A stretch of 28,586 nucleotides of DNA from Macrostomum lignano (taxonomy: Eukaryota): positions 1 to 28,586 of the forward strand of contig NIVC01005013.1 in assembly GCA_002269645.1 (NCBI GenBank). The letters run 5' to 3'. This document shows positions 2,138-27,285 of this stretch, one piece after another. Numbering within the stretch: position 1 is the first letter of the stretch; each line of letters starts with the position of its first letter. A program made the position numbers and the translations under genes. Below the pieces are notes generated by a model. That model saw only the letters and a list, made by a program, of their open reading frames with translations. It searched no databases and had not been told where the DNA came from.

Positions 2138-2157
2138 CAGGACGGCAATCAGCTCAC

Positions 2158-4052: not shown

Positions 4053-4112
4053 GGAAACCGATTCTCTTAAGCCCACTAAGCACTTCAGCAATCGAAGGCA
4101 TCGATGTCGAAC

Positions 4113-4785: not shown

Positions 4786-5034
4786 ATGGCAACTGGTCGA
4801 ACTGGTCGAACTGGTCAGTTCGACCGGGACCGCCTGGCCGGCATGTGCGAGTCGGAGGCTGCCGGGCTGCGCGAGTACGCGGAGTATCTGGACGGCTTCA
4901 AGCTGCAGGTGGCCGACACGGTCAACAGCGAGGACCGGCTGCAGGAGATCTACCAGGAGACGGCACCCACTGCCGCCGCGGCCGCGGTTGAAACTGGCAC
5001 CGTGCGGGCCTACCTGGTTGGCAACGACCTGAGG
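4786..5034 (+). CDS. Putative first coding exon of the plus-strand gene (MATGRTG...GNDLR)
   Basis: ATG start, GC3-rich codons, 83 codons, AGG|gtgagg donor. No family motif recognised. Its phase 0 does not match the next identified exon (phase 1), so a further exon or an indel is implied. Confidence 0.55.
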
Positions 5035-5429
5035 GTGAGGGACTTCTCTCGATGCCTCTGCATAAAGCGGTGAACGCGGCTGACTGTCGCAGGCGCCGCA
5101 ACCCCCGGCTCGAAAATTGGCTGGGGGAGGGGTTGTCGTGCGATTTGCAGCCACGAGCAACCCCCAAGGCACAGAGAGAGTACGTGCCTGACGCTTAGAA
5201 AGTCAGGGCTGCTGTACAACCTGTGTGAGCGTGTGTGAGTGCTGTGCCTGCGTACAGTATTTGCGCGCTTGTGCAGTGTGCTCAGGGGTCAGCGGAACGG
5301 GCAGAACCGCCGTCAGCGCTGGTTGTGGGACGATGCCGCCGAAGGCGTTGCGCCAGAGTGCCCCCCAGCCAAGCGACTTTTTTTCATAGAAATACCCAAA
5401 TAAAGAAACCCCATCAGGACATAACAAAA

Positions 5430-6426
5430 AAGACACTCCCATAAAGACACCCCCATAAAGACACCCCCATAAAGACACCCCCATAAAGACACCCCATAAA
5501 GACACCCCCATAAAGACACCCCCAGACACCCCCGATAAAGACACCCCATGAAGACACCCCCATAAAGACACCCCGATGAAGACACCCCCATAAAGACACC
5601 CCATAAAGACAGCCCCATAAAGACACCCCCAAAAAGACACCCCGATGAAGACACCCCCATAAAGACACCCCCATAAAGACAGCCCCATAAAGACACCCCC
5701 AAAAAGACACCCTATAAAGACACCCCATATAGACACCCCCATAAAGACACCCCCATAAAGACACCCCCATAAAGACACCCCATAAAGACACCCCCATAAA
5801 GACACCCCCATAAAGACACCCCCATAAAGACACCCCAGACACCCCGATAAAGACACCCCCATGAAGACACCCCGATGAAGACACCCCATAAAGACACCCC
5901 ATAAAGACAGCCCCATAAAGACACCCCCAAAAAGACACCCCCAAAGAGACACCCCCATAAAGACACCCCCAAAAACACCCCATAAAGACACCCTATAAAG
6001 ACACCCCATATAGACACCCCCATAAAGACACCCCCATAAAGACACCCCATAAAGACACCCCCATAAAGACACCCCCATAAAGACACCCCCATAAAGACAC
6101 CCCCATAAAGACACCCCCAGACACCCCCGATAAAGACACCCCCATAAAGACACCCCGATGAAGACACCCCATAAAGACACCCCATAAAGACAGCCCCATA
6201 AAGACACCCCCAAAAAGACACCCCAAAGAGACACCCCCATAAAGACATCCCCATAAAGACACCCCAAAAAGACACCCCCAAAAAGACACCCCATAAAGAC
6301 ACCCCATAAAGACACCCCATAAAGACATCCCCAAAAAGACACCCCATAAAGACACCCCATAAAGACACCCCCATATAGACACCCCCAAAAAGACACCCCC
6401 ATAAAGACACCCCCATAAAGACACCC
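5430..6426. repeat. 14-15 bp tandem repeat (ataaagacacccc[c]) in an intron
   Basis: Directly visible; explains the GCLYGGVF pseudo-ORFs. Confidence 0.97.
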
Positions 6427-6448
6427 TCCCGCCCTCTGACCACCGCAG

Positions 6449-6800
6449 AAGGCCGGCCGCCGCCGAACCACGAGCTGGAGGCCGCTGCCGTGAAGATTCA
6501 GCGGTCCTACCGGGCACACCGGATCCGGCGCCGCTGGCTCCAGCTGGTGTCCCGGATGGTGAAAGTCGGCGGCGCCGGCGACTCGGAGACACGCCTGGTG
6601 CCGGCCAGCCTGTTCGACAGCTACGCTCGGAGTCGCCTGCTGGCTGGCGGAGGCGGCAGCGGCGGCGGCAGCGGCGGCGGCAGCGGGGGCAGACCAGTCG
6701 TTTCTAATGGCGGAGGCGGCGGTCGATCCGCGCCGATGGAGGAGAGGATGCTGACCTACAGAAGAAGCCACGAGCTGCTGCACGGTGACGAGTTCACCAG
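6449..6800 (+). CDS. Coding exon with an IQ-like motif and a Gly-rich tract
   Basis: ctgaccaccgcag acceptor, AG|gtggtg donor, open frame AAVKIQRSYRAHRIRRRWLQL...GGGGSGGGSGGGSGG...GDEFTR. Phase 2 matches the exon at 9662. Confidence 0.65.
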
Positions 6801-6896
6801 GTGGTGACTGGCAGAAGATCGGAGCTTTGCTTCCGCGCATTTGTTGACCTGGACTCGGAGATTAACTAATGAGTCATTTACGAATATTCGATGCGA

Positions 6897-8754: not shown

Positions 8755-9248
8755 AGTCAATTGGGGTGTTGGGGCTCAGTCAATTTGGGTGGGGGCTCAG
8801 TCAAATGGGGTGTTGGGGCTCAGTCAATTTGGGTGGGGGGCTCAGTCAAATGGGGTGTTGAGGCTCAGTCAATTAGGGTGTTGGGGCTCAGTCAAATGGG
8901 GTGTTGAGGCTCAGTCAATTGGGGTGTTGAGGCTCAGTCAATTAGGGTGTTGGGGCTCAGTCAAATGGGGTGTTGAGGCTCAGTCAATTGGGGTGTTGAG
9001 GCTCAGTCAATTAGGGTGTTGGGGCTCAGTCAAATGGGGTGTTGGGGCTCAGTCAATTAGGGTGTTGGGGCTCAGTCAATTTGGGTGTTGGGGCTCAGTC
9101 AATTGGGGTGTTGAGGCTCAGTCAAATGGGGTGTTGGGGCTCAGTCAAATGGGGTGTTGAGGCTCAGTCAATTAGGGTGTTGGGCTCAGTCAATTAGGGT
9201 GTTAGGGCTCAGTCAAATGGGGTGTTGGGGCTCAGTCAATTGGGGTGG
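8755..9248. repeat. 23 bp G-rich minisatellite (ggggtgttggggctcagtcaatt), intronic
   Basis: Directly visible. Confidence 0.95.
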
Positions 9249-9857: not shown

Positions 9858-10242
9858 TAGGGGTAGGCAAACTTCGGCTATAGAATTCTAGATAATAATT
9901 ATATAGAATTCTATGCTTCGGGCCTCAGGCCACATGCGGCCCGCAAAGCCTCTCTATCCGGCCCTCGGGTCCTTTGAAACTCCACAATAGTAATCCGGCC
10001 CGCTCAATGTTTAAGTCTCTTCTCAGCTCCCTTCTCCTCCTCGCTTTTCTCTTCTCTCCTCTCTCCTCTCCTATTTCATCTCTCCTCTCCTCGTCTCTTC
10101 TCATTTCCTTAATTTCCTCACCTCTTCTTTCTCCTTTCTCTCTTCTGTCTTCTTTCCTCTCTTCTCTCCCCTCCTCTGGCCTGCATTCATGTAGTCAGGT
10201 TCTCTATCAGTCCCTTGAGGTAAAAATTTTTGCCGGCCCCTA
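9858..10242. mobile_element. hAT-like non-autonomous DNA element (MITE-like) with an internal CT-rich tract
   Basis: Imperfect terminal inverted repeats taggggtaggcaaac / ttttgccggccccta and subterminal ggccacatgcggcccgc and ccggcccgc motifs typical of hAT ends. No 8-bp target duplication found. Confidence 0.5.
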
Positions 10243-10858
10243 AGGGGAGCCGTTGGGGTAGCTTAAAGGGGAGTTGCTGGGGTAGCTTAAAGGGGAGTTG
10301 CTGGGGTAGCTTAAAGGGGAGTTGCTGGGGTATCTTTAAGGGGAGTTGCTGGGGTAGCTTTAAGGGGAGCCGTTGGGGTGGCTTAAAGGGGAGTTGCTGG
10401 GGTAGCTTTAAGGGGAGTTGCTGGGGTAGCTTTAAGGGGAGCCGTTGGGGTAGCTTTAAGGGGAGCCGTTGGGGTAGCTTTATGGGGAGCCGTTTGGGTA
10501 GCTTTATGGGGAGCCGTTGGGGTAGCTTTATGGGGAGCCGTTGGGGTAGCTTTAAGGGGAGCTGTTGGGGTAGCTCTAAAGGGGAGCCGTTGGGGTAGCT
10601 TTATGGGGAGCTGTTGGGGTAGCTTTATGGGGAGCCGTTGGGGTAGCTTTAAGGGGAGCCGTTGGGGTAGCTTTATGGGGAGCTGTTGGAGTAGCTTTAT
10701 GGGGAGCTGTTGGGGTAGCTTTATGGGGAGCTGTTGGGGTAGCTTTAAGGGGAGCCGTTGGGGTAATGGGGAGCTGTTGGGTAACTTTATGGGGAGCTGT
10801 TGGAGTAGCTTTATGGGGAGCCGTTGGGGTAGCTTTAGGGGAGCTGGTAGTGGAGCTT
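10243..10858. repeat. 24 bp G-rich minisatellite (ggggagccgttggggtagctttaa), intronic; one detached unit at ~9829-9857
   Basis: Directly visible. Confidence 0.95.
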
Positions 10859-11963: not shown

Positions 11964-12019
11964 GTGCGGTCACCCAATTCATTTAGTAGCTATGTGTGCT
12001 AGTGTAATTGATTCTAATC

Positions 12020-12612
12020 GCTCAGATCCCAATCCCTCAGATCCCAATTGCTTGAGTTCCAATCCCTCAGATCCCAATCCCTCAACTCCCAATCCCTCAG
12101 ATCCTAACCCCTCAGCTCCCAATCCCTTAGATTCCAACCCCTTAGATCCCAAACGCTCAGATCCCAATCCCCCAGATCCCCATTCCTCAGATTCCAATCC
12201 CTCGGATGCCAATCCTTCAGATCCCAATCCCTCAGATCCCGATCCTTCAGATCCCAATCCCTCAGATTCCAATCCCTCGGATGCCAATCCTTCCGATCCC
12301 AATCCCTCAGATCCCAATCCCTCAGATCCCAGTACCTCAGATCCCAGTACCTCAGATCCCAATCCCTCAGATCCCAGTACCTCAGATCCCAATCCCTCAG
12401 ATCCCAGTACCTCAGATCCCAATCCCTCAGGTCCCAATCCCTCAGGTCCCAATCCCTCAGATCCAAATCCCCCAGATCCAAATCCCTCAGATTACCAATT
12501 CCTCAGATTCAAATCCCAGCCCCTCAAATCCCAATTCCTCAGATTCAAATCCCAGCCCCTCAAATCCCAATTCCTCAGATTCAAATCCCAGCCCCTCAAA
12601 TCCCAATTCCCA
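12020..12612. repeat. 15 bp repeat (tcagatcccaatccc) grading into a 36 bp unit, intronic
   Basis: Directly visible; lies between a GT donor (11964) and an AG acceptor (12628-9) whose phases match. Confidence 0.95.
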
Positions 12613-12629: not shown

Positions 12630-13535
12630 CCCCGCGCCCAGCCGGCGGGCGCCTGTCTCCGCAGCAGCAAGCACAACCGGATCGATTTCTATCTGCCCGA
12701 CGCCGCCGAAGTGGCCCTGGTGCTGGTCGGGCACCACCCGGGCCTGGTGAGGCCGCGCCTGCTGCTCTGCCGGCTGGCTCGGCCGCTGGCCTGCGCCGAC
12801 CTGTCTGACTGCTGCCGCGGCGTCCGATTCGTGCTGCTCTGCATGGCGCCGCCGCCGGCCCCGGCGGACGCGGACCCGGTGCTGGCCTTCGAGCTCGGCC
12901 GCGTGTTTGCCTGTCTGGCGATGGACCCGGTGTTCCGCGCCCGCCTCTACTCGGCCAGCTGCCGGTGGGACCTCGTCGCCGCCCTGCACAGCAGCCTGGA
13001 CGGCACCGTGGTGCTGCCCTCCCCAGCCGCCTGGACTATGGACACCATCGAGGAGCTCGTCCGGTTCGAGGAGGCCGCAGCCGCCGCCGAGGTTGAGGAC
13101 GACAGCGGCAGTGAGCATCGCGATGCCGATGTCGATGGAATCGACGATGTTGGATTTTCGTCGGCCGACGTCGGGCTGGCGACGCCGGTTGCGGCAGCAG
13201 CGACGGCGTCGCCGGGTAATCGGCGCTGCCCGGTCTGGCTGGCCGCGTCTGGACTGCTCAGCGACTTGAGCAACCTGCGGCGCCGCTACCCGGGCGACCT
13301 GGCCGACGCCAGGCGTCACGCGTTGCCAATAGCAACCGGCCTGCTGTTCGTGTTTTTCACATGCCTGGCCCCGGCCGTGTCGTTCGGCGCTATGCTGCAC
13401 AACGAGACTGCGGGCGAGCTGACCGTCGGCCGGACTCTGGTGGCCAGCGGCCTCGGACAGCTGGCCTTCGCTGCCGCCGGCGGCCAGCCCATGATGCTGG
13501 TGGGCGTGACTGGCCCGATCTTCATCATGGAGCAG
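12630..13535 (+). CDS. SLC4 exon: rest of cytoplasmic domain and TM1-3
   Basis: 302 open codons: LPDAAEVALVLVG...RLARP...VRFVLL...ELGRVFACLAMDPVF...LDGTVVLP, then GLLSDL..RRYPGDL...FFTCLAPAVSFGAML...GGQPMMLVGVTGPIFIMEQ (HCO3- transporter family signatures). CAG|gtagtt donor. Confidence 0.95.
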
Positions 13536-13618
13536 GTAGTTCTCATGTCTTACAATTTTCTAATTCAGATGCCTCCAGCAGGATTTCTTTAGAATTTCAG
13601 TCCAATATTCCTTGCAGC

Positions 13619-13930
13619 GTCACTCTATTTTCATCAATGTCACTCTATTGGTATCAATGTCACTCTATCGACATCAATGTCACTCTATCGACATCAATGT
13701 CACTCTATCGGTATCAATGTCACTCTATTGGTATCAATGTCACTCTATTGGTATCAATGTCACTCTATCGGTATCAATGTCACTCTATCGGTATCAATGT
13801 CACTCTATCGGTATCAATGTCACTCTATCGGTATCAATGTCACTCTATCGGTATCAATGTCACTCTATCGGTATCAATGTCACTCTATTGGTATCAATGT
13901 CACTCTATCGGTATCAATGTCACTCTATAG
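13619..13930. repeat. 20 bp tandem repeat (gtatcaatgtcactctatcg), intronic
   Basis: Directly visible, about 15 units. Confidence 0.97.
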
Positions 13931-14921: not shown

Positions 14922-15715
14922 GCACCGGCATGGCACTCCCGCAGCTCAGCGGCAATCTCACTCAGCTGCTGTCGGGCCTGTCGCCACGCCTGCCCAGCGC
15001 AGCCGACCTGGCCACCGTTGGCGCCTTCGGCCACCTCATCGCCCTGCTGATCGGCTGCTGCACCGCCGTGGTGCTGTTCACCGAGACCGGCCTGTGCGAC
15101 AGCGGCCTGGAGCAGCGCCTGGCCAAGCCGGCTGGCCGTCACCTCAGCCTGGCTCTCATCGCGTCGCTGGCGCCGCCGCTGCACGGCCTGCTGGGCTGGC
15201 CGCTGCTGACAGGGGCCACCATCCGATCGCACACGCACGTCCGGGTGCTGACGCTGGCGGATCCGGCTAACCCGATTCCCGGCTGTCCGAGGCGCGTCCT
15301 TGGCGTGGCCGAGCAGCGGGTCAGCGGCCTGGCCGTAGGGGCCCTGCTGGCGGCCTCGGTGCTGGCGGCCCGGCTGCTGCGCCTCATCCCGCTGGCCGCC
15401 ATGGACGGCATGTTCCTCTGCATGGGCCTGGCCGCCCTGGCCGACCTGCAGCTGGCCGACCGGCTGTTCAACCTGCTGAAACTGAAGAAGAATCGCCAGC
15501 CGAAGCCCTACTTGGACGTGCCGAGCGCTGTGCTGCTGACGTTCACGGCTCTGCAGCTGGCCCACGTGCTGCTGCTGCTCACGCTGAACTGCCTGGCCCA
15601 GTTTCTGCAGCTGGCCTACGCAGCCCTCGCCTTCCCACTGGTCATTCTGGCCTTCGCCTTGCAGCGCCACCTGCTGCTACCGCGCTGGCGGCTCATCTCT
15701 AAACACCTGGCCAAG
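14922..15715 (+). CDS. SLC4 exon, TM8-14
   Basis: VLFTETGL, GRHLSLAL, GWPLLTGATIRSHTH, VAEQRVSGL, IPLAAMDGMFLCMG, QLADRL, FTALQL, AALAFPLV. AAG|gtaatt donor at 15716. One base short near the exon start. Confidence 0.92.
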
Positions 15716-15830
15716 GTAATTGTGTACAGTGTTATACCTATTGCATGTTGGGCTGCTCTGATAGCGGGCCAAGCACGTAGGCTTTGGGTCAGGGCCATAA
15801 ATATAAATACGGTATCTCATCATCTATACC

Positions 15831-16330
15831 ATCTGCCCTTTAAAGTCATTGTTCCTTATTTACTCGACGAACAGAACTTTCGGCTGCCCCAGTCGGCTGC
15901 ACTGAAACCGAACTGGTGGGATATTTTTTGTCGATCTGGCACTAACGCGAGGTCTCTCCTGTGGCCTTTGATCCTCAAGTCTCCGTCATTGTCCGTCTTG
16001 GTACATTCTCGATCCACCAGCTTGCTAGTCGCCTGGTGCAGATCATCGGCGTTCCATTAGTGCCGGCCGGATGCAGATACGAGTTCTCCGTAGTATTCGG
16101 CCACTAGTTAGCTTGATCAGGTATATGTAGTCGCGGTGTTTGCCTACCTCCACCACCACGCCCCTCCGTTGCCACAGCTTGGTTGTCGGGTCTTGTAGAA
16201 CCACAGTCGAGCCAATTTTGATTCGGTCCAGACTTTTCTTGGACTTGTTGTACTGCTGCATCACTGTCTTGTGGGTTTCAGATGCAGTCTGCTCCATCTG
16301 TTGAATTTTGCTGTACCACTCGGGTTAAAG
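15831..16330 (-). mobile_element. Gypsy-type LTR retrotransposon remnant: integrase C-terminus and a possible polypurine tract
   Basis: QYNKSKKSL...IGSTVVLQDPTTKLWQRRGVVVEVGKHRDYIYLIKLTSGRILRRTRICIRP is typical of the C-terminal end of Gypsy integrases. aaagggcaga followed by TG at ~15831 resembles a PPT/LTR start. Confidence 0.7.
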
Positions 16331-16899: not shown

Positions 16900-17782
16900 C
16901 AGGTAGGGCTCTGGAGCGCGCGGAGCAGCGACTGAGAGTGGGCACCAGAAGCGAGCCAATGGAGAGCGCAACGGGGAGCGGCGAGCTTCTCATTGAAGGA
17001 GCTGGTGAGAGCGCGCCCGGGGGCAGAGATGTGCCACACCACTTGGGGGGGGGGGGTCACCCGTGCAGATGACCACAGAGAAACCGCCGTTGGTGGTGCC
17101 CTCAGTGGCGGAGCCGTCGCAATAGATGCTGACGATGGCGGGGCGGGAGGAGGCAGAGCGGGTGTCAAGTGGTTCGCGCAACTATCGCTCCGGTGGCAAA
17201 GTGGCGAGCAGGTTGGAAGCGTGCCGCCTCTGGCCGAGCGGTGGTTGACCTGACCAGTCGCCATGTCGCTTGTGGTACAGAAAGAGCAAAGCAAAAACTG
17301 GCCTCGATGCGCAGCGCTTCAATCGGCGTTGAGCGATGATTCGGGGAGCGGCGTTTTGCGAACGTTGGAGCTTCTCAAAAGTGGTGCCGTCTAGCCAAGG
17401 GTGACAGGCGGGGTCGGCGTACAGCATGATACTCCGTTGCATGGCGATAAAAGTGCGCTTGAGGGCGTCTTTCTGCCATTCCCAATCGCGCGCGGCGAGG
17501 CAGACCAGCATGCGATTGCGCGAATGCACCTTCCTGCAAACTCCTTCCGTGTGCGTGCTGAAGGTGAGGATCCGATCGTAAGTAAGGCCGAGCAGCCGCG
17601 GCGTGAGATTGCGCTTGAGTGGGGCTTGGCCGAGGCTAAGACGCGGGGACCATTTTGCCTTCACCGGGTAGATGGAGAAAAAGGCAGCCTCGCTCTTGGT
17701 AGGATTAAGGGCGAGCTTGCGGGAGGCGCACCACTCGGTCACGGCGTCGAGGCCAGCCTGGACCTCGGCTTCTGCGATCCGC
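16900..17782 (-). mobile_element. Fragment of an RNase H-containing non-LTR retrotransposon (I/Ingi-like): RT thumb plus degenerate RNase H
   Basis: VQAGLDAVTEW...LALNPTKSE...LLGLTYDRILTF...RS..LYA.PA.HPWL...LQRSQNAA, then IYCDGSATEGTTNGG and SQSLLRALQS. Several frameshifts. Not similar to the RT at 21562-22860. Confidence 0.85.
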
Positions 17783-18790
17783 TTCGCAGCCATATGGCGT
17801 GATTTCTTTTTGGTACACTCGAACTAAAACACTAACTCTAAGGGTCAGGAGGCACACAAAATCCGCTCACTAAGAAGTGGGGCGACTACAAGATAAAACT
17901 AGAAGAGTGGGGAAATAAATGTACAGTGGAATGGACGGAGGGGCTAGCGTATGTACTTTGAGATAGAGCTAAACTATTCAAAGTCTATTGTACCCTTTGT
18001 AAGGGTTGCACAAATCAGAGTACATGTAATTCTCGTTGAGAGTACCTCATCACGGAAATCTTTGTTAAAACGAGGTGCCGTAAAAACTTAGCGTAGATCA
18101 GTTCCGAAAAACTCCGCCGCACACTTAAACACTTGAAATTGGTGTTGCGTGCGTCCTATGGGCTTGCGATCACGCTCTAGAGGGAATTGACAAGCAATGT
18201 TTTTGCTTCATTAGTACAATTTCTTGGAAGGGGTTTCACAAATCAGGGAACACTCTTTGAATTTGAATGTTCCTCTTCACGGAAATCGTTGTTAAAACGA
18301 GGTGCCGTAAAAACGGGTACATATCTGTTCGGAAGAACTCTGCCGCTGTATTATTGTTTTATTTAATCGAAAGAATTTAAATATTTACAGGTGATAAAAA
18401 TAAGGAAATCTAAAAAATGCGTGCTGGATTTTTAAGAGCCTGTTAAAGGCAAAAAGAGGCTATTGAGTAAAAAATGAAATCAAACGCCAGAGCGCATGTT
18501 CAGATAAAATTTTATAGGTAGTATATCATTGGTATAAAAACAGCCAGGGGTATTTGTAAAAGCTGTCAAAGAATACAAATAGTTTGAATAAAGTAAATTT
18601 TCACAGGGAGATTACAGATCATACAAGGGTCCTATCATCCGATCTCTCTGGCTCAGGCAGCATAAATAGTCTTTTTAATGCATTTCAGCGCGTGCTCACT
18701 TCGGGTCTGGGAGACTGTCGACCAGCCTAACCTTGGATTAGGAATCCCCTGTTTCTTTCCCGAAGCCTTATGGCATCCTACAGAGCAGAG
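17783..18790 (-). repeat. Diverged copy of the [ORF2 end - 3'UTR - leader - ATG] block of the AlkB LINE, with an internal ~230 bp duplication
   Basis: 18610-18782 aligns by eye with 21308-21482, 17783-17980 with 20530-20750 and 26994-27197, and the AT-rich middle shares blocks with 20805-21120. Confidence 0.85.
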
Positions 18791-19140
18791 GGTCGCCTCT
18801 GAGATCTCGAAAGGCACGTCAGGTGTGACAAATGTGATGACTGGCTGCTGCTGGACTCTGTCGGGCCCTGTATGGGTTATCCAGCGGTCGGGCTCTGGAT
18901 GGATGTTCAAGCAGCTTTTCCTCACGCAGCGCGCCGCCCAGGAAGACATTGTAGTCTTGCCCCGACGCCGGCAATACGAGGTAGGCCGGCTGATTCGCCA
19001 TCTGCGCAGTGTTGACGCCGCGGCTTCACCAGCAAAAAATTTGCCTGTACGAGCAGCCAGACAATATAGGGCACCAGCTTGTTGGCCGCGACCTGTTACA
19101 CTTTGAAAACCACCGGCGGGATGGCAGCCTGAGGCCTGCA
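18783..19140 (-). pseudogene. Diverged, frameshifted fragment of the central gag region of the AlkB LINE
   Basis: MANQPAYLVLPASGQDYNVFLGGALREEKLLEHP and TGPDRVQQQPVITFV..DVP..ISEATL match ORF1 at ~25170-25540. Confidence 0.9.
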
Positions 19141-19287
19141 TTCGATTTAGATATTGAAAGAATATTGAAATAAAAGTTTAAATAAATAAAACTATTTTTC
19201 AATATTTGGAATTTCTTTGCATACATTTGGAGTTTGAAAAAGTGACAAATACTGCACACAGAAGGGGTCTGATAAAAATGAGGAAAT

Positions 19288-20540
19288 CTAAACAAATACG
19301 TGCTGGATACAATTGTATGAGTCTCGCGTCGCCTGCTGCCCCCGAGGCCTGTCATCGTCCTTGCCGCCTTGGTCGTCGCCGAAGGGACCACCGTTAAGCG
19401 GCTGGCTGTAGGTCGGGTCATCCGGCAGAGCCCGCTTGCGCCACAGCTCCGGCTTGGTGACGCGGAAGGTTAGCGAGATGCAAACACCATTCTGAGAGTG
19501 GGCGGCGGGCGCCTGGTGCTGCAGGCGCTTCTGGCAGTTTCCTGCCATCAGAATCAGCGAGCCTGGCAGCGTTGGAAAGCGGTGCGTCACGTTGCCGTCC
19601 CGACGGCGCAGCATAAACAGCCGCTCAGCGCCGAAGGACACGTTTGCGATCGTCGGCCCGTCGCCGAGCTCGTCCTCATCATCCGAGTGCCAGGGAATCC
19701 GGTCTCCCGGCTCGGTGTAGAAGTTCACCAACACGGAGTTGAACTTCGGGACATCGAACTGGGTATCATGGTAAATGAAGTCACGAATGTCTTCAATTAC
19801 CTGATGCCAGTCTAGATTTTCCTTCAGCTCAACCCCGCTGTAGGTGTACGACGGGCCGATCCAGTAGACGCGGCGCTGCTCACTCGGACGATGCTGAAAG
19901 GCCAGAGGCAGCAGGTCGGTGATCAGGCGCTCGTAGACTTGGTCCGCGACCTCGCTCAGGAACTTGGGCGCATAGATGATGGTGCTGTCGCTGGCGTAGA
20001 TCGTCTGCTGACAGTCAGTCAAGTCAGGCTCATCAGGGAAGATGATTTGACTGATGTCAGCGTCCAGTTGCTCGGCAAGCGGCTTTGGCAGCGTCGAGGC
20101 CTGGTCTGCAACCGATTGCTGGCGCTCCTCAGACGTCGGCGCTGCCGCTGCCGCACTGAGCTCGCTGGACTCGGCAGTTGGTGGCTCGGTGGTTGCTGCG
20201 GCCTCGTTGGATGGCAGGGCGCTTGTCTGGCTTGGCTCGTCGCAGTCGAGAGACATGCGCTGCTCTGCCTCTGCGCCTGCAGCCTCCGGCAGCTGCTCAT
20301 TCTCTCGCAGGATCTCCTCTGCGTTGCGCAAGAGCTCGCCGGCCGGTGGGCTGATCGAGTGGCGGCCTTCCAGACTGCGTCGAGCTCGCATCTGGCCTGC
20401 TGGCGGCGGGCTCGCGGTCGATGGCTCAGCTGTCGGCGTCAGTCAAGAAGCTGGCGACCGTAGGCTTCGTTCGGACGATACCGGTGCTCAAGAGAGGGCC
20501 GGCAGTCCATCTTTTTAGCGCTGGCGCGATTTGCAGCCAT
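19288..20540 (-). CDS. Second, 3'-truncated copy of LINE ORF1: N-terminus plus AlkB domain only
   Basis: Near-identical to 25740-27004. HSD and HQ retained but RISLTFR is CISLTFR. The ORF from 20391 is open for 367 aa and stops at 19288 in adjoining sequence; the start at 20540 is out of frame through small indels. Confidence 0.88.
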
Positions 20541-21469
20541 ATGGCGTGATTATTTGGTGCACTCACACTAAACTAAACTAGACAACTACTAATGAGACAG
20601 GAGGCACACAAAGTGCGCTCGCTGAGAGGGGTGGGGCGACTGCAAGATAAGACTAGGGGTGGGGTAGAGATAAAAACAAATGTACAGTGGAATGGAAGGC
20701 TAACTAAAGTACTTTTAAGAGCTAAGCTAGGCTAGTCTAAACTATTCAACTTCTAATAAGCCTTTCTAGGAAAGGCCTGCAAAAACTAGAGAATTCTCCT
20801 AAGAGTATCCCTCCACGGAAATCTTTGTTGTTGTTAAAACGAGGTGCCGTCGAAACCGGCGCGGGTCAGTTCCGAAGAACTCTGCCGCAGTTATATTTTG
20901 TATTTGATCGAAAGAATTAAAAATATTTACAAGATTTCGATTTGAATATTTAATACGAATATTGAAATTAAAAATATACATATATAAAACTATTTTTCAA
21001 TATTTTGCAGAATTTTGCACGCATTTGGGGATAAAAAAGAGGGGAGGGGAATCCCACACAAAGAAGGGATCTAATAAAAACAGGACATCTAAAAAATACG
21101 TGCTAGATATTTGAAGGCCTATTGAGAATAAAAGCAAGACATTTAAGTAAAAAAAAGAGATTAAAAATGCAATAGCGCATATTTGAATTTAGTTGTAAAA
21201 ATAGAATGAATATAGTAAAGGTGTAAAAAAGCAATTAGTGATATTTGTAGAGCAGTTGGGTAAAAAACACAGTTGGGAAAATTGTAAAAAGAAACGCGAG
21301 GAGACATAGAGATTACCTAATCAGTCCTAATGACTGATCAACCGATCTCTGTCTCAGGCAGCAAGTTTAGTTTTATTAGTTGCGTTTCAGAGCGTGGTCA
21401 CTTCCGGTTTGGAAGGCTGGTAGCCAGCCTAACCCTGGGGTGGGATTCCCCTGTTTCTTTCCCGACGCC

Positions 21470-24254
21470 TCATGGCATCCCAGAGGACATTGAGGACGGG
21501 GTTCGGCCCGGAGCCCGAGGGGCTTCCGGCTCAATGTGGAAGCTGTGGAGCTTGGCTGCCCTCATCTTGAGCAGCCAAGCCACCCCCAGCTGCTTGACTC
21601 TGTCTGCGAGCATCGGCATACCTGCCAGCTTGTGCAGGTATTCAATGCTGATGTAGGATGGCACACCATAGCAGATACGGAGAGCCAGGTTTTGAATTTT
21701 TGCAATTTGATTTGGTTAGTCGCACAAATTTGGCTCAGGATTGGCGCTCCATAGGTGAGAGCGCTTTCTCCGTATGCCCTGTACAGCATTCTGAGGGTGG
21801 TGCTACTCAGCTTAGTCATTTTTGCAATTCTGCACAGTGACATTACAATGGCTCTGCTGGTATCTGCCATGTTGTCCACATGTTTGTTCAGGCAGAGGCT
21901 CTGGTCAAGGAGGACACCCAGGAATTTCACCTCCTGACAGTACGGAACCTCAGTGTCCCCCAGATACAGTTTGGGTCGCAAGTCCATGCGCCTAGTGGGT
22001 TTGTAGTTGAAAGCGATTGCTTTGCTTTTCCCGGCATTCAGTCTAATGCCCTGTTTACCGCACCAGTCAAAGACTCGTCTGAGGTAGCTTTGAAGGGATG
22101 TTCGGAGCCCCGCAAAGGTGTCTGCTGAGGCCCAGACGGCCATGTCGTCTGCGAATTGACTGCGTTTGACGCTTGAGATGGTGGGAGTCGGCATTGAGCT
22201 GACGAAGAGGAGGTACAGGAGAGGGCTCAGAATGCCTCCCTGAGGGACGCCAGCCTGGATGGTGTGGGGATCGCTTAGGGCCCCCTCGATTCGAACCTGG
22301 ATCTGTCTGTCTCGCAGGTAGTCAGACAGGATTCGCATGAGCATAGGTGGAAAACCATCAGTGAGCATGCTATGCCTGATCTTGTCGTGCCAGGTGGAGT
22401 CAAAAGCTGCCTCTGCATCCAGGAAGACTGCAGCGGACTTTTTAGCTTTGCACTTTGCTACCATGACATCTTGTGCCAGACGGCACAGGTTGTCATACGT
22501 GGAGTGAATTTTGCGGTAGGCGCATTGGTCATCTCCTAGGGTCTTATTATCCTCAAGGTGCTTGGTGAGTCTTTTTGCTATAAGCTTCTCAAACACTTTG
22601 CCCAGACATGAGGTCAGGCTGATTGGTCTGTAGGAGTTGGGGTGTTCGGGCGGTTTGTCCGGCTTGGGGATCATTGTCACCACAGCTTTCTTCCAGGCGC
22701 TGGGGAAAATCCCTCGACCGTAGCAGGCGTTGAAGAGGTTAGTGAGTCTCGTGATTGCCACCCCCTCTAAGCCCAGCTTGAGGACGCAGTTGGGAATCTT
22801 GTCCAGCCCGGGTGCTCCATCAGGCCTGAGGTGCTCCAGTTCCCACACTGTGTCTGCCACAGAGAATGCAGCATCAAGTGGGTGGGTCTCATGGGTTCGA
22901 TTCCCTCAGGAACGGGGTAGAATGAGGTGAGCTGTGCCACATCGGCCACCTCACGTTTGAGCTGTTCGCATGTGGAAGGGACTGGGCGCATCTTTGAGTC
23001 CAGAGTCTCGGCTAGAAGGTTAGCCTTCTCCAGATCTGTGTGCGCAGTTGTTTGACCCAGGGTGAGGCTGGGGATGGAGGTTGGCTTAAATTTGCCCATC
23101 AGCTTTTTAGTGTCGTGCCAGAAATTCTTCACTTTCTTGTTCTTGCTGTTTTCAACAATACTCTCACAGACTTTGGTGAGCTTTCCATTCTGGAAGGCGC
23201 TAATTTCTCTCTTTATGCGATTTGCGAGCTGGTTTGCTTGGGTTTTGAAATTTTGATCCCGTGTGCTGAAGAAGAGGCGTCTGAGTCGTCTGCGCTCTTT
23301 GATCAGGTCGAGGATGTACTTGGGTAGGGCGTTTTTGGCACCACAGTCTGGTACTGTGGAGTCAATCACGGTGTGAATGGCCTTTGTGATGTGATCCACT
23401 TCGGCATTGATTTGGTCAGCATTTGATAATTTAATATTCTGATCTGAGCTCAAAGCTTCACTGATTTTGAGTCTGAACTCGTCCCAGTTTGTTTTTGAGA
23501 AGTTTTTGGGTCTGGGGGACCAGCCCATTTCTTCGACTGAATATTGAGCGTGAGGATTATAGGTAAGTGGTCACTGCCCAGGTCAGGACCCACCTCAAAG
23601 TCCTGCACAAATGGGAGAAAGTCCTCAGTGGCCAGGGCGAGGTCCAAGACATTCCTAGAAATCAGCCCGTTTTTGGTGGCCAGTCTGGTGAACTGACCGG
23701 CTGATTGAGAATGGTGGGCGAGGTGGGGCCCTCAGACAGCCAGTCGTGCAGCTGGTAGCCAGCCATGTTGTTGCTGCTGTCACCCCGAGGAAGCGGTGTC
23801 TGGCATTGAGGTCACCCATGAGCACACTGCGCCTACGGAGAGAAGATTTTTGAGTAGGTTCAGGTTCAGATGGTACGGTGCTGGAGACCTGTACACCAGA
23901 GCGAGATTGAAGTCAGGACCAGAGTTGTCAGACAAGCTCACGGTGCAAGAGATGGCTTCATGGTTGACATTGTCATACTGCAAGCGCACATTTGTGAGTT
24001 TGACGCGAGGAGAGTGGCAAGGAGAGCCCGCGTTTGACTTGCGGGGTATCATACCGAATGATGGAGTACCCGGGAATCTGGACAGTGTGACAACTTTTGA
24101 GAATGGTCTCAGAGAAGAGGGCAATGTCTAGCTCCTGACTGACGACCCACTGTGTCAGCTCTCTGATTTTCGGGTTGAATCCCCTGCAGTTTAGGTGCAT
24201 AATCTTCAGGGCTGTGGTTTGATTGTTTGAGTCTACAGTTAACGCACTGAAGTT
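21470..24254 (-). CDS. LINE ORF2: apurinic endonuclease plus reverse transcriptase, split by several frameshifts
   Basis: APE: LKIMHLNCRG, LFSET, ALVYRSP, GDLNA, LDLAL, LGSDHLPI. RT: APGLDKIP, YRPISLTSCLGKVFEKLI, FLDAEAAFDS, GVPQGGILSPLLY, QFADD, KFLGVLLD. C-terminus PSYISIEYLHKLAG... to the stop at 21470. No RNase H. Confidence 0.95.
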
Positions 24255-27004
24255 TCAATTCAAGTCTTGAGTTTAGCTGCCTGAGACTAGGACTCAGTGG
24301 TCGCGCCGCCATGCCCGGCACTTCCTGGAGTGCAGCCCGCACAATGTCCTCAACCATTTTACTGGTTGATTCCACAGTGAGGACCTCCCCAGGCGGTCGG
24401 GACAGGGCCTGCACAACCACTTGAGTCAGAGAGCGGGTGATCAGGGGCAACAGCATGCTCACCACCGACATAAAGTCACTAAGCTGCAGCTGCACCGCCT
24501 GGCCGGCATCAGCTGACGGAGCAGTCGCATTGACATCAGCGCTGGCAGCTGCTGCAGACTCGTCTCTGCCGCCGGAGCGCTCCTGGCATCATCGGTCACG
24601 ATGACAAGCGGCCGGATCGCGGCGGGTACCGGCACCGTGCGCCTGCCTCGGCGGATCAGCCAGCCGCTGTCGGAGTCGTCGTCGACGGCGGCGTCGTCGG
24701 TCTCACTTGACACTGGGGCAGCAGCGGCCGCAGCTTCCGCAGCTCGCGCCGCGGCTTTGGCCTCAGCAGCCGCTCTGGTCGCCTTGTCGTGCTCCGCCTT
24801 GGCGACGGTGCAGGCTCGACTGGTGGTTCGGTGCGAGCCGCCGCAGTTGGCGCAGACCGCTGGGCCCTCGTGCTGGCACTCCTTCCAGGAATGCTGGCCG
24901 CCGCAAATCCGGCAGCGCTGCTGCCCCCGACACTGGGCAGCGCGGTGGCCGAACTCCTGGCAGCGCTGGCATTGCAGAGCGCGGACCGGCTCGTCTGTGC
25001 GGCTGTCCTCGCAGTTGAACTTCAAGAAGTCGGTGCAGATGCCATCGCGGAGGCACTTCTCGTAGGTCATCGCCGACTTTGTGAAGATGCGCACGAACTG
25101 GGTTGCCTTCCCAGTCGCTCTGGCTCGGATTCTGTGGACGCTGACAATGTCCAGCTTGAGCGTGTCGCGCAACAGGGTCGCGAAGTCAGCCTCCGAGAAT
25201 GCGAGGGGCACCTCAGTAGCGACGAAGGTGCGTACCGGCTGCTGCTGCACTCTGTCGGGCCCTGTTCTGTTGTCCAGCGGTCGGGCTCGGGCTGGACGGC
25301 GCTTTACGGGATGCTCGAGCAGCTTCTCCTCGCGCAGCGCGCCGCCCAGGAAGACGTTGTAGTCCCGCTCCGACGCTGGGAACACGAGATAGGCCGGCTG
25401 ATTCGCCATCGGCGCAGTGTTGACGGCTCGAGCTTCGCCGGCAAAGTTGGTCTGCAGCCAGGCAACGAACTGCATCAGCTTGTTGGCCGCGTCCCGGTGC
25501 ACCTCAAAAACGATCGGCGGGATGGCAGCCTGGGGCCTTCTGGGCGGCGCAGGGCGCGCCGCAACCTGCGCGTAGGGCCGCGCTGCCGCAGCCGCCTGCG
25601 CGCTTGTCGCCGAAGCCGCTGCCGCACCGGCCGGCCAGGAAGCCGCCGAAGCCGCCGCCGCACCGGACGCCGCGCCGCGACCTCCTCGCCTGCCTCGCTG
25701 GTGGCCGCCACGGCCGCGCCGACCCCGATCGCCTTCGCGGTCTCGCGTCGCCGTCGCCTGCCGCTCCTGGGGCCTGTCGTCGCCCCGGCCGCCCTGGTCG
25801 TCGTCGTGGCCGCCTTGGTCGTCGTCCCGACCGCCTTGGTCGTCGCCGAATGGGCCGCCGTTGAGCGGCTGGCTGTAGGTCGGGTCATCCGGCAGAGCTC
25901 GCTTGCGCCGCAGCTCCGGCTTGGTGACACGGAATGTTAGCGAGATGCGGACGCCATTCTGAGAGTGGGCGGCGGGCACCTGGTGCTGCAGGCGTTTCTG
26001 GCAGTTTCCTGCCATCAGAATCAGCGAGCCTGGCAGCGTTGGAAAGCGGTGCGTCACGTTGCCGTCCCGACGGCGCAGCATGAACAGCCGCTCAGCGCCG
26101 AAGGACACGGTCGCGATCGTCGGCCTGTCGCCGAGCTCATCCTCATCGTCCGAGTGCCAGGGAATCCGGTCTCCCGGCTCGGTGTAGAAGTTCACCAACA
26201 CGGAGTTGAACTTCGGGACATCGAACTGGGTATCATGGTAAATGAAGTCACGAATGTCTTCAATTACCTGATGCCAGTCTAGATTTTCCTTCAGCTCAAC
26301 CCCGCTGTGGGTGTACGACGGGCCGATCCAGTAGACACGGCGCTGCTCACTCGGACGATGCTGAAAGGCCAGAGGCAGCAGGTCGGTGATCAGGCGCTCG
26401 TAGACTTGGTCCGCGACCTCGCTCAGGAACTTGGGCGCATAGATGATGGTGCTGTCGCTGGCGTAGATCGTCTGCTGACAGTCAGTCAAGTCAGGCTCAT
26501 CAGGGAAGATGATTTGACTGATGTCAGCGTCCAGTTGCTCGGCAGGGGGCTTTGGCAGCGTCGAGGCCTGGTCTGCAGCCGATTGCTGGCGCTCCTCAGA
26601 CGTCGGCGCTGCCGCTGCCGCACCGAGCTCGCTGGACTCGCAGTTGGTGGCTCGGTGGTTGCTGCGGCCTCGTTGGATGGCAGGGCGCTTGTCTGGCCTG
26701 GCTCGTCGCAGTCGAGAGACATGCGCTGCTCTGCCTCTGCGCCTGCAGCCTCCGGCAGCTGCTCATTCTCTCGCAGGATCTCCTCTGCGTTGCGCAAGAG
26801 CTCGCCGGCCGGTGGGCTGATCGAGTGGCGGCCGTCCAGACTGCGTCGAGCTCGCATCTGGCCTGCTGGCGGCGGGCTCGCAGTCGATGGCTCAGCTGTC
26901 GGCGTCAGTCCAAGAAGCTGGCGACCGTAGGCTTCGTTCGGACGATACCGGCTCGAGAGAGGGCCGGCAGTCCATCTTTTAGCGCTGGCGCGATTCGCAG
27001 CCAT
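24109..27004 (-). CDS. LINE ORF1, about 960 aa if two 1-nt gaps (~26640 and ~24565) are repaired: AlkB dioxygenase, RGG/Ala linker, gag core, three zinc knuckles
   Basis: Start MAANRASAKRW at 27004. AlkB, gag core and CQRCQEFGHRAAQC / CRICGGQHSWKEC / CANCGGSHRTTSRAC are in one uninterrupted ORF (24459-26489). The second copy supplies the missing G at ~26640. Confidence 0.9.
25929..26447 (-). other. AlkB (ALKBH2/ALKBH3-like) 2OG-Fe(II) dioxygenase domain within ORF1
   Basis: FNSVLVNFY...IPWHSDDEDELG..PTIATVSFGAERLF...GSLILMAG..Q...QHQVP...RISLTFR: HxD (26148-26156), distal H, and RxxxxxR are all present. Confidence 0.97.
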
Positions 27005-27212
27005 ATGGCGTGATTATTTGGGTGCACTCACACTAAACTAAACTAGACAACTACTAATGAGTCAGGAGGCACACAAAGTGCGCTCGCTGAGAGGGTGGGC
27101 GACTGCAAGATAAGACTAGGGTGGGGTAGAGATAAAAACAAATGTACAGTGGAATGGAAGGCTAACTAAAGTACTTTTAAGAGCTAAGCTAGGCTAGTTA
27201 GGTCGAAGTGCA

Positions 27213-27285
27213 GTCCGGAAAAATTGCCAACGAGGAGCGAAGCGAGCGAAGCGAGCGTAGCTCCTCGTTGGCAATTTTTTCGGAC
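27213..27285. repeat. Inverted repeat: 26 bp arms (1 mismatch) around a gaagcgagc-repeat loop
   Basis: gtccggaaaaattgccaacgaggagc ... gctcctcgttggcaattttttcggac. Confidence 0.95.

What the first reader, a model, noticed from the sequence alone, without database searches (positions are those of the whole stretch)
24109..27004. LINE retrotransposon whose ORF1 carries a catalytically complete AlkB nucleic-acid demethylase
Seen: an AlkB domain (HSD...H...RISLTFR) and the gag core with three CCHC knuckles sit in one unbroken ORF, followed by an overlapping APE-RT ORF2, so AlkB is part of the element rather than a neighbouring gene; it has no introns. Established: ALKBH2/3-type enzymes oxidatively remove 1-methyladenine and 3-methylcytosine, lesions that block Watson-Crick pairing and reverse transcription, and some plant RNA viruses carry AlkB in their replicases. 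LINE ORF1 extras I know are RRM, PHD, esterase and CCHC domains; I do not know of an AlkB-gag fusion in a LINE. Inference: ORF1p coats the element RNA, so AlkB would be delivered to the RNA or cDNA to repair methyl damage or erase host methyl marks, i.e. a retrotransposon-encoded RNA repair or counter-defence system.
Basis: partly seen in the sequence, partly recalled or inferred. Interest (0 to 1): 0.93.

Follow-up and report, generated by a model that had tools for sequence, protein, structure and literature searches.

The report
LINE ORF1 fused to AlkB demethylase
A young LINE retrotransposon of the flatworm Macrostomum lignano encodes an ALKBH3-like nucleic-acid demethylase fused in front of its RNA-binding ORF1 protein; several diverged LINE families conserve this layout under purifying selection, which suggests the element repairs or un-marks its own RNA template before copying it.

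Summary
The core observation holds. On the minus strand, one 676-codon ORF (24459-26489) contains an AlkB domain (PF13532, E=1e-20), a low-complexity linker, two predicted RRM folds and three CCHC knuckles. APE and RT coding sequence follows.

This copy is damaged:
- A 1-bp deletion cuts off the ATG-bearing N-terminus.
- A 17-bp insertion shifts the ORF1 tail.
- ORF2 carries nine 1-bp deletions.
- A near-invariant substrate-pocket Tyr is His.

Sister copies (98.5-99% identical) on M. lignano contig NIVC01002892.1 keep the same AlkB-gag junction, and one has an intact 926-aa APE-RT ORF2.

An exhaustive search found the same AlkB-RRM-RRM-CCHC ORF1, followed by APE(-RT) ORF2, in at least eight other families. 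These are 33-37% identical to the window ORF1 and come from M. lignano and from unidentified SRA runs. The catalytic residues are invariant, and AlkB dN/dS is about 0.1. ORF2 diverges in step with ORF1, so AlkB is an old, selected part of the lineage.

By sequence and predicted fold the domain is ALKBH3/ALKBH2-type, not ALKBH5/FTO-type.

Best reading: ORF1p delivers, in cis, an enzyme that removes RT-blocking m1A/m3C from the template. This is inferred, not shown.

I found no published LINE-AlkB report. The closest precedents are orchid Ty3/Gypsy AlkB and plant-virus AlkB.

The parts
20737..27198 (-). Full-length copy (W1, 6462 bp) of the AlkB-LINE: 5'UTR, ORF1, ORF2, 3'UTR
   Evidence: Aligns end to end with L001 9804-16259 at 0.67% substitutions. 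The array starts at the same element position in both loci, and the upstream flanks are unrelated.
27005..27198 (-). 5' UTR
   Evidence: Lies between the shared 5' end (27198) and the ORF1 ATG at 27004.
26641..27004 (-). ORF1 N-terminal region (ATG at 27004; no recognisable domain). It is cut from the rest of ORF1 by a 1-bp deletion at about 26641.
   Evidence: (P0002 reads through in one frame).
24459..26489 (-). Uninterrupted 676-codon ORF holding AlkB, linker, RRM1, RRM2 and 3xCCHC. The stop-free frame extends upstream to 26762.
25905..26462 (-). AlkB (ALKBH3-like Fe(II)/2OG dioxygenase) domain. Key residues: R50, N100, Y102, H112, D114, H169, R181, R187. Y61 is His in this copy.
   Evidence: PF13532 E=1e-20. 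Human ALKBH3 E=6e-23. Model pLDDT 89.5; Foldseek top hit ALKBH3, TM 0.8. Invariant columns; coordinates.
25524..25904 (-). Low-complexity linker (D/G/R-rich, then A-rich)
   Evidence: Translation. Poorly conserved and of variable length among families. Highest dN/dS in the sister-family comparison (0.38).
25293..25514 (-). RRM1 (beta-alpha-beta-beta-alpha-beta fold) of the ORF1 core
   Evidence: AlphaFold model pLDDT 90. Foldseek hits to tandem-RRM proteins.
25005..25232 (-). RRM2 of the ORF1 core
   Evidence: Shared with AlkB-less ORF1 proteins.
24810..24971 (-). Three CCHC zinc knuckles
   Evidence: Invariant Cys/His columns. Coordinates. Weak zf-CCHC Pfam hit.
24288..24809 (-). ORF1 C-terminal tail, including a conserved hydrophobic helix. 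In this copy it is frameshifted by a 17-bp insertion (24546-24562) and a 1-bp deletion (24308).
21429..24200 (-). ORF2 (APE endonuclease + reverse transcriptase). ATG at 24200, stop at 21429-21431. Broken by nine 1-bp deletions in this copy.
   Evidence: RVT_1 E=4e-37. The intact 926-aa homologue in L001 has Exo_endo_phos_2 + RVT_1 and hits L1 ORF2p and R2 in the PDB. Deletions listed.
20737..21428 (-). A/T-rich 3' UTR without a poly(A) tail. It abuts the next copy's 5' end with no spacer.
19351..20736 (-). Second, truncated head-to-tail copy (W2): 5'UTR, N-terminus and AlkB (ORF 19288..20391). Decayed: R181C, R122G and others.
   Evidence: 96.8% identical to 25818-27198. PF13532 E=2e-19. Substitutions.

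Best explanation
What it is (shown). This is a recently active non-LTR (LINE) retrotransposon of Macrostomum lignano. Its ORF1 protein is about 900 aa when intact. It consists of a disordered N-terminus, an ALKBH3-like Fe(II)/2-oxoglutarate dioxygenase, a low-complexity linker, and a canonical type-I LINE ORF1 core of two RRMs and three CCHC knuckles. An APE-RT ORF2 follows. The window copy is a damaged or error-laden member of the family. AlkB is an ancient part of a diversified LINE lineage and has been maintained by selection.

How it most likely works (inferred).
1. ORF1p binds, in cis, the RNA that encoded it.
2. That binding brings the tethered AlkB domain onto the single-stranded template.
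3. The domain oxidatively removes N1-methyladenine and N3-methylcytosine, and similar Watson-Crick-face methyl lesions or marks.
4. These lesions stall ribosomes and, above all, reverse transcriptase. One such lesion in a 6.5-kb template would give a dead, 5'-truncated insertion.
5. Removing them therefore raises the yield of full-length copies.
For: Architecture:
- One ORF holds AlkB, RRM-RRM and 3xCCHC, and APE-RT follows it.

Recurrence:
- There are 4 copies at 2 loci in M. lignano with unrelated flanks.
- M. lignano has further families that are less than 50% identical (P0046-P0049, P0051, P0053, P0191).
- Four intact ORF1s (757-962 aa) come from runs SRR31628392-437. Three of them (P0042, P0043, P0044) are directly followed by a verified APE or APE-RT ORF2. 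The ORF after the fourth (P0045) was not checked.

Co-divergence:
- ORF2 is 38-39% identical and collinear over 930 aa. This matches ORF1 at 33-37% and AlkB at 34-42%.
- The window AlkB scores 186 bits against a retroelement-AlkB profile built without it. It scores 146 bits against animal ALKBH3-like sequences and 140-163 bits against stand-alone sets. Leave-one-out tests give the same preference for all members.

Selection:
- R50, N100, Y102, H112, D114, H169, R181 and R187 are invariant.
- AlkB dN/dS is 0.12, against 0.17 for the RRM core, 0.11 for CCHC, 0.38 for the linker and 0.41 for the tail. Synonymous sites are saturated.

Substrate class:
- The best solved relative is human ALKBH3 (E=6e-23), ahead of ALKBH2 (7e-15).
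- The model (pLDDT 89.5) superposes on ALKBH3-ssDNA complexes at TM 0.8 and rmsd 2.0-2.6 A. ALKBH2 comes next. No ALKBH5 or FTO appears in the top 50.

Established knowledge:
- ALKBH3 prefers single-stranded DNA and RNA carrying m1A or m3C, and these lesions block reverse transcriptases.
- AlkB domains of plant RNA viruses demethylate RNA in vitro (cited in PMC9289625).
Against: - No biochemical or genetic data exist for any member.
- The substrate (RNA or ssDNA; m1A/m3C or another mark) is inferred only from similarity to ALKBH3.
- The window copy itself is not functional as assembled: it has frameshifts and Y61H, and the second copy has R181C.
- No fully intact ORF1 was seen for this particular family. 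Each copy has its own private 1-bp deletions, which may be long-read assembly errors.
- The NJ tree of the short domain is poorly resolved. A marine stand-alone AlkB (P0060) intrudes next to the window sequence, and strict monophyly gets 16/200 bootstraps.
- The donor lineage of the AlkB is unresolved.
- Whether flatworm LINE RNA carries m1A or m3C at all is unknown.
Confidence: 0.6

Rival explanations
1. Epitranscriptomic counter-defence. The AlkB domain erases a regulatory host mark, such as m6A, that would otherwise target the LINE RNA for decay, sequestration or chromatin silencing. This is what was proposed for the orchid Ty3/Gypsy AlkB and for some plant viruses.
For: There is a precedent of a retrotransposon-encoded AlkB with in-vitro m6A demethylase activity (PMC9289625). 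Catalytic residues are conserved. Tethering to an RNA-binding ORF1 core fits an RNA substrate.
Against: The domain is ALKBH3/ALKBH2-like by sequence and fold. ALKBH5 and FTO-type m6A erasers are absent from the top 50 structural matches. ALKBH2/3-type enzymes act mainly on N1-meA and N3-meC. Nothing is known about m6A on flatworm LINE RNA.
Confidence: 0.17
2. DNA-level repair. The enzyme acts on single-stranded DNA intermediates of target-primed reverse transcription, or on the element's genomic DNA. It would remove 1mA/3mC there, for example 3mC made as a by-product of DNMT activity on methylated transposons.
For: ALKBH3 and ALKBH2 are DNA repair enzymes. The best structural matches are ALKBH3-ssDNA complexes. 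M. lignano is reported to retain DNMT1/DNMT3 and ALKB2, and DNMTs generate 3mC (PMC9246332). CCHC/RRM ORF1 proteins also chaperone cDNA (PMC4120745).
Against: ORF1p mainly coats RNA. The first-strand cDNA exists only briefly and is newly synthesised, so it has little time to accumulate lesions. There is no evidence that these LINEs are DNA-methylated.
Confidence: 0.13
3. Non-catalytic module. The AlkB fold serves only as an extra nucleic-acid-binding or oligomerisation domain of ORF1p.
For: Some TE-borne enzyme domains are inactive. For example, the DIRS1 methyltransferase domain is predicted inactive (PMC4738411). The two copies in this window carry damaging substitutions (Y61H, R181C).
Against: All Fe(II) and 2OG ligands, plus R50, are invariant across families that share only 27-42% identity. 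dN/dS is about 0.1. The damaging substitutions are private to decayed copies.
Confidence: 0.06
4. One-off chimera, misassembly or domesticated host gene. On this reading AlkB is not really part of a mobile element.
For: The copies in the window and in L001 are tandem and locally duplicated, so they alone could descend from one chimeric event.
Against: The same fusion occurs in at least eight other families, less than 50% identical to the window family. Where the downstream ORF was examined, it is their own APE-RT ORF2. These come from independent assemblies. The flanks of the two M. lignano loci differ. Host-type AlkB genes (P0066, P0146) are distinct.
Confidence: 0.02

Closest known systems
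Type I (subtype IB) ORF1p LINEs of the Jockey/CR1/L2 group (Khazina & Weichenrieder classification; Metcalfe & Casane 2014, PMC4120745)
   Same: Two RRMs lie immediately upstream of three gag-like CCHC knuckles, and an APE-RT ORF2 follows.
   Different: A roughly 200-aa AlkB dioxygenase and a roughly 170-aa N-terminal extension precede the RRMs. None of the five described ORF1 types contains AlkB. The exact RT clade was not determined.
Phalaenopsis Ty3/Gypsy elements with an AlkB ORF (PMC9289625)
   Same: A retrotransposon has captured an AlkB-family dioxygenase with intact catalytic residues, proposed to act on the element's own RNA.
   Different: That element is an LTR retrotransposon in plants, with a separate extra ORF (ORF2, 565 aa) rather than a fusion to the RNA-binding protein. 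Its AlkB is close to m6A demethylases and was acquired recently in one orchid genus. Here the element is a LINE in a flatworm, the AlkB is ALKBH3-type, the acquisition is old, and many families carry it.
AlkB domains in replicase polyproteins of plant RNA viruses (Alpha-/Betaflexiviridae, Closteroviridae)
   Same: An AlkB domain is encoded by a selfish RNA-templated replicator. It is thought to keep the template free of m1A/m3C. These viral domains are structural matches of the model.
   Different: The viral domains sit inside the methyltransferase-helicase-RdRp replicase and share only 18-25% identity with the LINE domain. Here the domain is fused to the nucleic-acid chaperone of a reverse-transcribing element.
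Human ALKBH3 (PDB 2IUW, 8JNK, 8JNR)
   Same: It is the best solved relative: E=6e-23, about 33-37% identity, TM 0.8, and the same HxD...H and RxxxxxR ligands plus the R131 equivalent.
   Different: ALKBH3 is a stand-alone cellular repair enzyme. The LINE domains carry derived features: LLP(L/V)A in place of the (L/I)PWxQ motif, and RK(I/V)xW(F/Y)GPxY. Activity is untested.
Esterase-type (type IV) ORF1p of CR1/L2 LINEs (PMC3905857)
   Same: This is a precedent for an enzymatic fold inside a LINE ORF1 protein.
   Different: It has a different fold (SGNH esterase) and a different proposed role (lipid or membrane interaction). It has no link to nucleic-acid modification.

Membership tests
APE-type non-LTR (LINE) retrotransposon | ORF2 with an N-terminal apurinic-like endonuclease followed by a reverse transcriptase | tested here: met
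   Exo_endo_phos_2 (E=2e-11) plus RVT_1 (E=2e-36) in the intact 926-aa ORF2 of sister copy L001-A. The window has the same sequence, broken by 1-bp deletions. PDB hits to L1 ORF2p and R2.
APE-type non-LTR (LINE) retrotransposon | No long terminal repeats; multi-copy with a defined common 5' end | tested here: met
   Self-BLAST shows only the tandem neighbour copy and no LTRs. Arrays at two loci start at the same element base, with unrelated flanks.
APE-type non-LTR (LINE) retrotransposon | 3' poly(A) or simple-repeat tail and target-site duplications | tested here: inconclusive
   The 3' UTR is A/T-rich but ends without poly(A) and abuts the next copy directly. TSDs could not be assessed because both arrays are open-ended.
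Type I ORF1p (RRM + CCHC) | At least one RRM immediately upstream of CCHC zinc knuckle(s) | tested here: met
   The model (pLDDT 90) shows two beta-alpha-beta-beta-alpha-beta domains. Foldseek top hits are tandem-RRM proteins (E about 1e-6). Three invariant CCHC knuckles are present. The definition comes from PMC4120745.
AlkB family, ALKBH2/ALKBH3 subgroup | 2OG-FeII_Oxy_2 domain above the Pfam gathering score | tested here: met
   75 bits against a 31-bit cut-off. 97-110 bits in the sister families.
AlkB family, ALKBH2/ALKBH3 subgroup | Fe(II) triad HxD...H and 2OG-binding N, Y and RxxxxxR | tested here: met
   H112, D114, H169, N100, Y102, R181 and R187 are present in the window copy and invariant in 21 aligned AlkBs.
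AlkB family, ALKBH2/ALKBH3 subgroup | Substrate-pocket residues (ALKBH3 R131 and Y143 equivalents) | tested here: inconclusive
   R50 (= R131) is present. Y61 (aligned with ALKBH3 Y143; near-invariant) is His in this window copy but Tyr in W2, L001-A/B and the other families.
AlkB family, ALKBH2/ALKBH3 subgroup | Closer to ALKBH3/2 than to other AlkB subfamilies | tested here: met
   By phmmer, ALKBH3 scores 6e-23 and ALKBH2 7e-15, and no other AlkB subfamily appears at E<=1e-3. By Foldseek the order is ALKBH3, ALKBH2, ALKBH6, E. coli AlkB.
AlkB family, ALKBH2/ALKBH3 subgroup | Oxidative demethylation of m1A/m3C | not testable with these tools
   Needs an enzyme assay.
m6A RNA demethylases (ALKBH5/FTO/plant ALKBH9-10 type, as in orchid Gypsy AlkB) | Sequence or fold closest to ALKBH5/FTO/ALKBH9B-type enzymes | tested here: not met
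   No such entry appears among PDB sequence hits at E<=1e-3 or among the top 50 structural hits.
Viral AlkB domains | Embedded in an RNA-virus replicase polyprotein; closest relatives viral | tested here: not met
   The context is LINE ORF1. Viral replicase AlkBs match at only 18-25% identity, which is worse than ALKBH3.

The most novel reading that the evidence does not exclude
A whole lineage of LINEs, and at least one Penelope-like element, carries its own template-repair or de-marking enzyme. An ALKBH3-type demethylase is fused to the RNA chaperone and clears m1A/m3C-type methyl groups from the element's RNA in cis, and this is needed for efficient full-length reverse transcription. That would show that methylation of the Watson-Crick face, whether damage or host-installed, is a significant natural barrier to retrotransposition, and that retroelements have evolved a dedicated countermeasure.
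Probability: 0.45. Interest if true: 0.85.

Novelty: new variant of a known kind. Interest (0 to 1): 0.75.

Why it matters
LINE ORF1 proteins are usually seen as passive RNA-binding chaperones. The only enzymatic fold described in them so far is an esterase. A nucleic-acid demethylase conserved under purifying selection, sitting in ORF1 of many diverged LINE families (and of a Penelope-like element), adds a new functional class to LINE biology.

It also makes a third, independent case of selfish RNA-templated replicators carrying AlkB, after plant RNA viruses and orchid Gypsy elements. This points to methyl lesions or marks on template RNA as a general constraint on such replicators.

The idea is directly testable in M. 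lignano, which has transgenesis, and in vitro. An RNA-chaperone-tethered ALKBH3-like enzyme could also be a useful reagent for removing RT-blocking modifications.

Tried and rejected
1. The word-indexed protein searches with full ORF1 and with the gag part were swamped by low-complexity words and returned only the two M. lignano gene models. The exhaustive phmmer search was needed to find the other families.

2. A neighbour-joining tree of the AlkB domain was too poorly resolved to prove monophyly or to name a donor. The first attempt timed out. I replaced it with profile and leave-one-out scoring.

3. The 123/124-aa ORFs between ORF1 and ORF2 in L002 and L010 are not conserved between families, so I dismissed them as spurious.

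4. Nucleotide comparison of the Logan contigs with the window and L001 gave no hits, so it could not show whether those runs are from M. lignano. A text search for the run accession found nothing.

5. I rejected a bacterial-HGT origin, which the first AlkB-only search suggested because its nearest hits were about 200-aa stand-alone proteins. The exhaustive search and the profiles show the nearest relatives are other retroelement AlkBs. Animal ALKBH3-like and stand-alone homologues are about equally distant.

6. Rfam and tRNA scans of the window found nothing.

7. Plus-strand ORFs overlapping the element (for example 24789..25940 and 26307..26930) lie antisense to the GC-rich element and were not scanned. 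I treated them as GC-driven artefacts.

8. A PDB sequence search of the PLE ORF gave no hit. I identified it from its motifs instead.

Full report
**Source and anatomy**

The window is Macrostomum lignano DNA.
- The ORF1 translation is 100% and 98% identical to the gene models BOX15_Mlig027759g8 and g7.
- Window 19351-27198 aligns at 98.5% to contig NIVC01002892.1 of GCA_002269645.1, fetched as L001. The flanks differ, so this is another locus.

The feature lies on the minus strand. From 27198 to 20737 there is a 6462-bp element made of these parts:
- a 5'UTR;
- an ATG at 27004;
- a 172-codon N-terminal ORF with no recognisable domain;
- a 676-codon ORF (24459..26489);
- fragmented APE and RT coding sequence down to a stop at 21429-21431;
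- a roughly 690-bp A/T-rich 3'UTR without poly(A).

A second, truncated copy follows head to tail with no spacer (20736->19351). It is 96.8% identical and again carries an AlkB ORF. L001 shows the same tandem arrangement.

**Checking the observation**

The 676-codon ORF has the following features.
- A 2OG-FeII_Oxy_2 (AlkB) domain: E=1e-20, 75 bits against a 31-bit cut-off.
- Catalytic and ligand residues H112-x-D114, H169, N100, Y102 and R181-x5-R187.
- A D/G/R-rich then A-rich linker.
- A core that AlphaFold models with pLDDT 90 as two RRM folds. Its best PDB matches are tandem-RRM proteins such as nucleolin, Pub1 and HuR.
- Three CCHC knuckles with invariant Cys and His.

Relative to the sister copies, this copy differs as follows:
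- a 1-bp deletion at about 26641 disconnects the ATG-bearing N-terminus;
- a 17-bp insertion at 24546-24562 and a 1-bp deletion at 24308 shift the C-terminal tail, which creates the apparent ORF1/ORF2 overlap;
- nine private 1-bp deletions lie in ORF2;
- His replaces the near-invariant Tyr61.

In L001 copy A, ORF2 is intact: 926 aa with Exo_endo_phos_2 and RVT_1, and PDB hits to L1 ORF2p and R2. There ORF1 stops 86 nt before the ORF2 ATG. Every copy has its own private 1-bp deletions, while substitutions are few (W1-A 0.67%, A-B 0.08%). This pattern could be long-read assembly error or early decay. I could not tell which.

**Is AlkB part of the element?**

Yes. An exhaustive phmmer search of 1.84 billion representative proteins ranked a set of proteins that match both halves of the query directly after the two M. 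lignano gene models.
- P0042 (757 aa), P0043 (843 aa), P0044 (962 aa) and P0045 (892 aa) come from Logan assemblies of runs SRR31628392-437. Each was recovered identically from 3-4 runs.
- P0046, P0047/P0191, P0048, P0049, P0051 and P0053 come from the M. lignano UniProt/UniParc proteome.
- All of these are less than 50% identical to the window family.

Their loci show the same order:
- L002 has an AlkB-RRM-RRM-CCHC ORF1 followed by an intact 948-aa APE-RT ORF2.
- L004 and L005 have an APE ORF starting right after ORF1.

The ORF2s of L001 and L002 are collinear over 930 aa at 39% identity, and L004 matches at 38%. ORF1 is 33-37% identical across families, and the AlkB domains 34-42%. The parts have therefore diverged together. 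The window AlkB scores 186 bits against a profile of the other retroelement AlkBs. It scores 146 bits against animal ALKBH3-like proteins (which include an M. lignano host-type gene, P0146) and 140-163 bits against stand-alone sets. Leave-one-out tests give the same result for every member. Shared derived motifs, LLP(L/V)A and RK(I/V)xW(F/Y)GPxY, agree with this. A neighbour-joining tree alone was too weak to prove monophyly. I conclude there was one old acquisition. The donor is unresolved.

**Selection**

- Across six ORF1s that share 25-32% identity with the window protein, the invariant columns include all Fe(II) and 2OG ligands and R50, the ALKBH3 R131 equivalent. The same columns are invariant in a 21-sequence AlkB alignment.
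- Between sister families P0042 and P0044, synonymous sites are saturated (pS about 0.7). AlkB has pN 0.215 and dN/dS 0.12. The other regions give 0.17 (RRM core), 0.11 (CCHC), 0.38 (linker) and 0.41 (tail).
- P0043 versus P0045 shows the same ranking.
- The AlkB domain is therefore as constrained as the canonical ORF1 core.

**What kind of AlkB**

- The best solved relative by sequence is human ALKBH3 (E=6e-23), then ALKBH2 (7e-15).
- A model built from alignment A3 (pLDDT 89.5, pTM 0.86) superposes best on ALKBH3-ssDNA complexes (TM about 0.8, rmsd 2.0-2.6 A). ALKBH2, ALKBH6 and E. coli AlkB follow. ALKBH5 and FTO are not in the top 50.
- Viral AlkBs, including plant-virus replicase domains, match only at 18-28% identity.

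**Mechanism**

Shown: the architecture, its recurrence, the conservation of the active site, and the ALKBH3-like fold.

Inferred: type-I ORF1 proteins bind and chaperone the element's RNA (PMC4120745). Fusion would place the demethylase on that single-stranded template. ALKBH3-type enzymes remove m1A and m3C from single-stranded nucleic acids, and these lesions block reverse transcriptases (established knowledge). The benefit would be more full-length cDNA. The same rationale was proposed for plant-virus AlkB (as cited in PMC9289625).

Rivals:
- erasure of m6A-type regulatory marks, which is the orchid Gypsy precedent (PMC9289625) but is disfavoured by the subfamily assignment;
- repair of ssDNA intermediates, or of DNMT-generated 3mC (M. 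lignano retains DNMT1/3 and ALKB2; PMC9246332);
- a non-catalytic role, disfavoured by the invariant active site;
- a chimera or misassembly, which is refuted.

**Comparison with what is known**

The ORF1 core fits type I (subtype IB: two RRMs and three CCHC) of the Khazina-Weichenrieder and Metcalfe-Casane scheme. That scheme lists RRM, CCHC, coiled-coil/CTD, PHD and esterase domains but no AlkB. Eight full-text searches found no report of AlkB in a LINE or a Penelope-like element. The nearest precedent is the AlkB ORF of Phalaenopsis Ty3/Gypsy elements. UniProt labels the M. lignano proteins only as 'Fe2OG dioxygenase domain-containing protein'. Repbase and Dfam could not be checked. The RT clade (Jockey, CR1, L2 or another) was not determined.

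**Verdict**

This is a real, recurrent and selected feature. It is a new variant of a known kind: a LINE with a type-I ORF1 plus a captured AlkB, paralleling AlkB capture by plant viruses and an LTR element. The window copy itself is a defective member of a young family. I score interest at 0.75. The biochemical function is untested.

Noticed in passing
L012 (Logan SRR19430222) 2120-5158 and 5266-7398: A 1012-aa protein (P0193) carries an AlkB domain of the same retroelement type (LLPLA / RKxxWYGPxY signature; PF13532 E=5e-31). The next ORF has LPKIHK, YIDD and GIY...YVG motifs, meaning a Penelope-like RT plus GIY-YIG endonuclease. AlkB therefore also sits upstream of the RT in a Penelope-like element.
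   Followed up: partly
window 19351-27198; L001 9804-21146: At both M. lignano loci the LINE copies are arranged head to tail with zero spacer, and the junction is conserved between loci. This tandem organisation is unusual for LINEs, and its origin is unexplained.
   Followed up: partly
window 20737-27198 versus L001: The window copy has about 15 private 1-2-bp deletions but only 43 substitutions relative to L001-A. This excess of single-base deletions looks like long-read assembly error rather than natural decay.
   Followed up: partly
window 26307-26309 (codon 61 of ORF1) and 19288-20391: The window's full-length copy has Y61H at a near-invariant substrate-pocket Tyr. The truncated second copy has R181C (a 2OG-binding Arg) and four other replacements.
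   Followed up: yes
window 445-2137, 2877-3443, 5429-6426, 6897-7733, 8754-9247, 10241-10846, 12016-12517, 13633-13928: Minisatellite arrays are unusually dense here (units of 14-34 bp, 15-74 copies each). The 545-aa ORF 5203..6840 is an artefact of the 14-bp array.
   Followed up: partly
window 12711-13592 and 14930-16060 (+): Exons of a host anion-exchanger / bicarbonate-transporter gene (Band_3_cyto, HCO3_cotransp), with minisatellites in the intervening sequence.
   Followed up: no
window 27213-27243 / 27255-27285: A 31-nt inverted repeat (90% complementary, 11-nt loop) lies 15 bp upstream of the LINE 5' end. It is not present upstream of the L001 array.
   Followed up: no
window 17182-17793 (-) and 18288-19309: There is an RT C-terminal fragment of another LINE. 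There is also a mosaic of fragments 77-82% identical to the gag and 3'UTR of the AlkB-LINE, pointing to a related, more diverged family nearby.
   Followed up: no
L013 (Logan SRR31252247) 237-1358: P0111 is an ORF1 with both RRMs and three CCHC knuckles, homologous to the AlkB-LINE core, but with only 33 residues upstream and no AlkB. It is a candidate AlkB-less relative for dating the acquisition.
   Followed up: partly
P0066 / P0146 (M. lignano host-type AlkB genes): M. lignano has a C2H2-zinc-finger-AlkB protein present as three near-identical paralogues on large contigs. It also has an ALKBH3-like protein with a roughly 200-aa C-terminal extension. Neither is especially close to the LINE AlkB.
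   Followed up: partly
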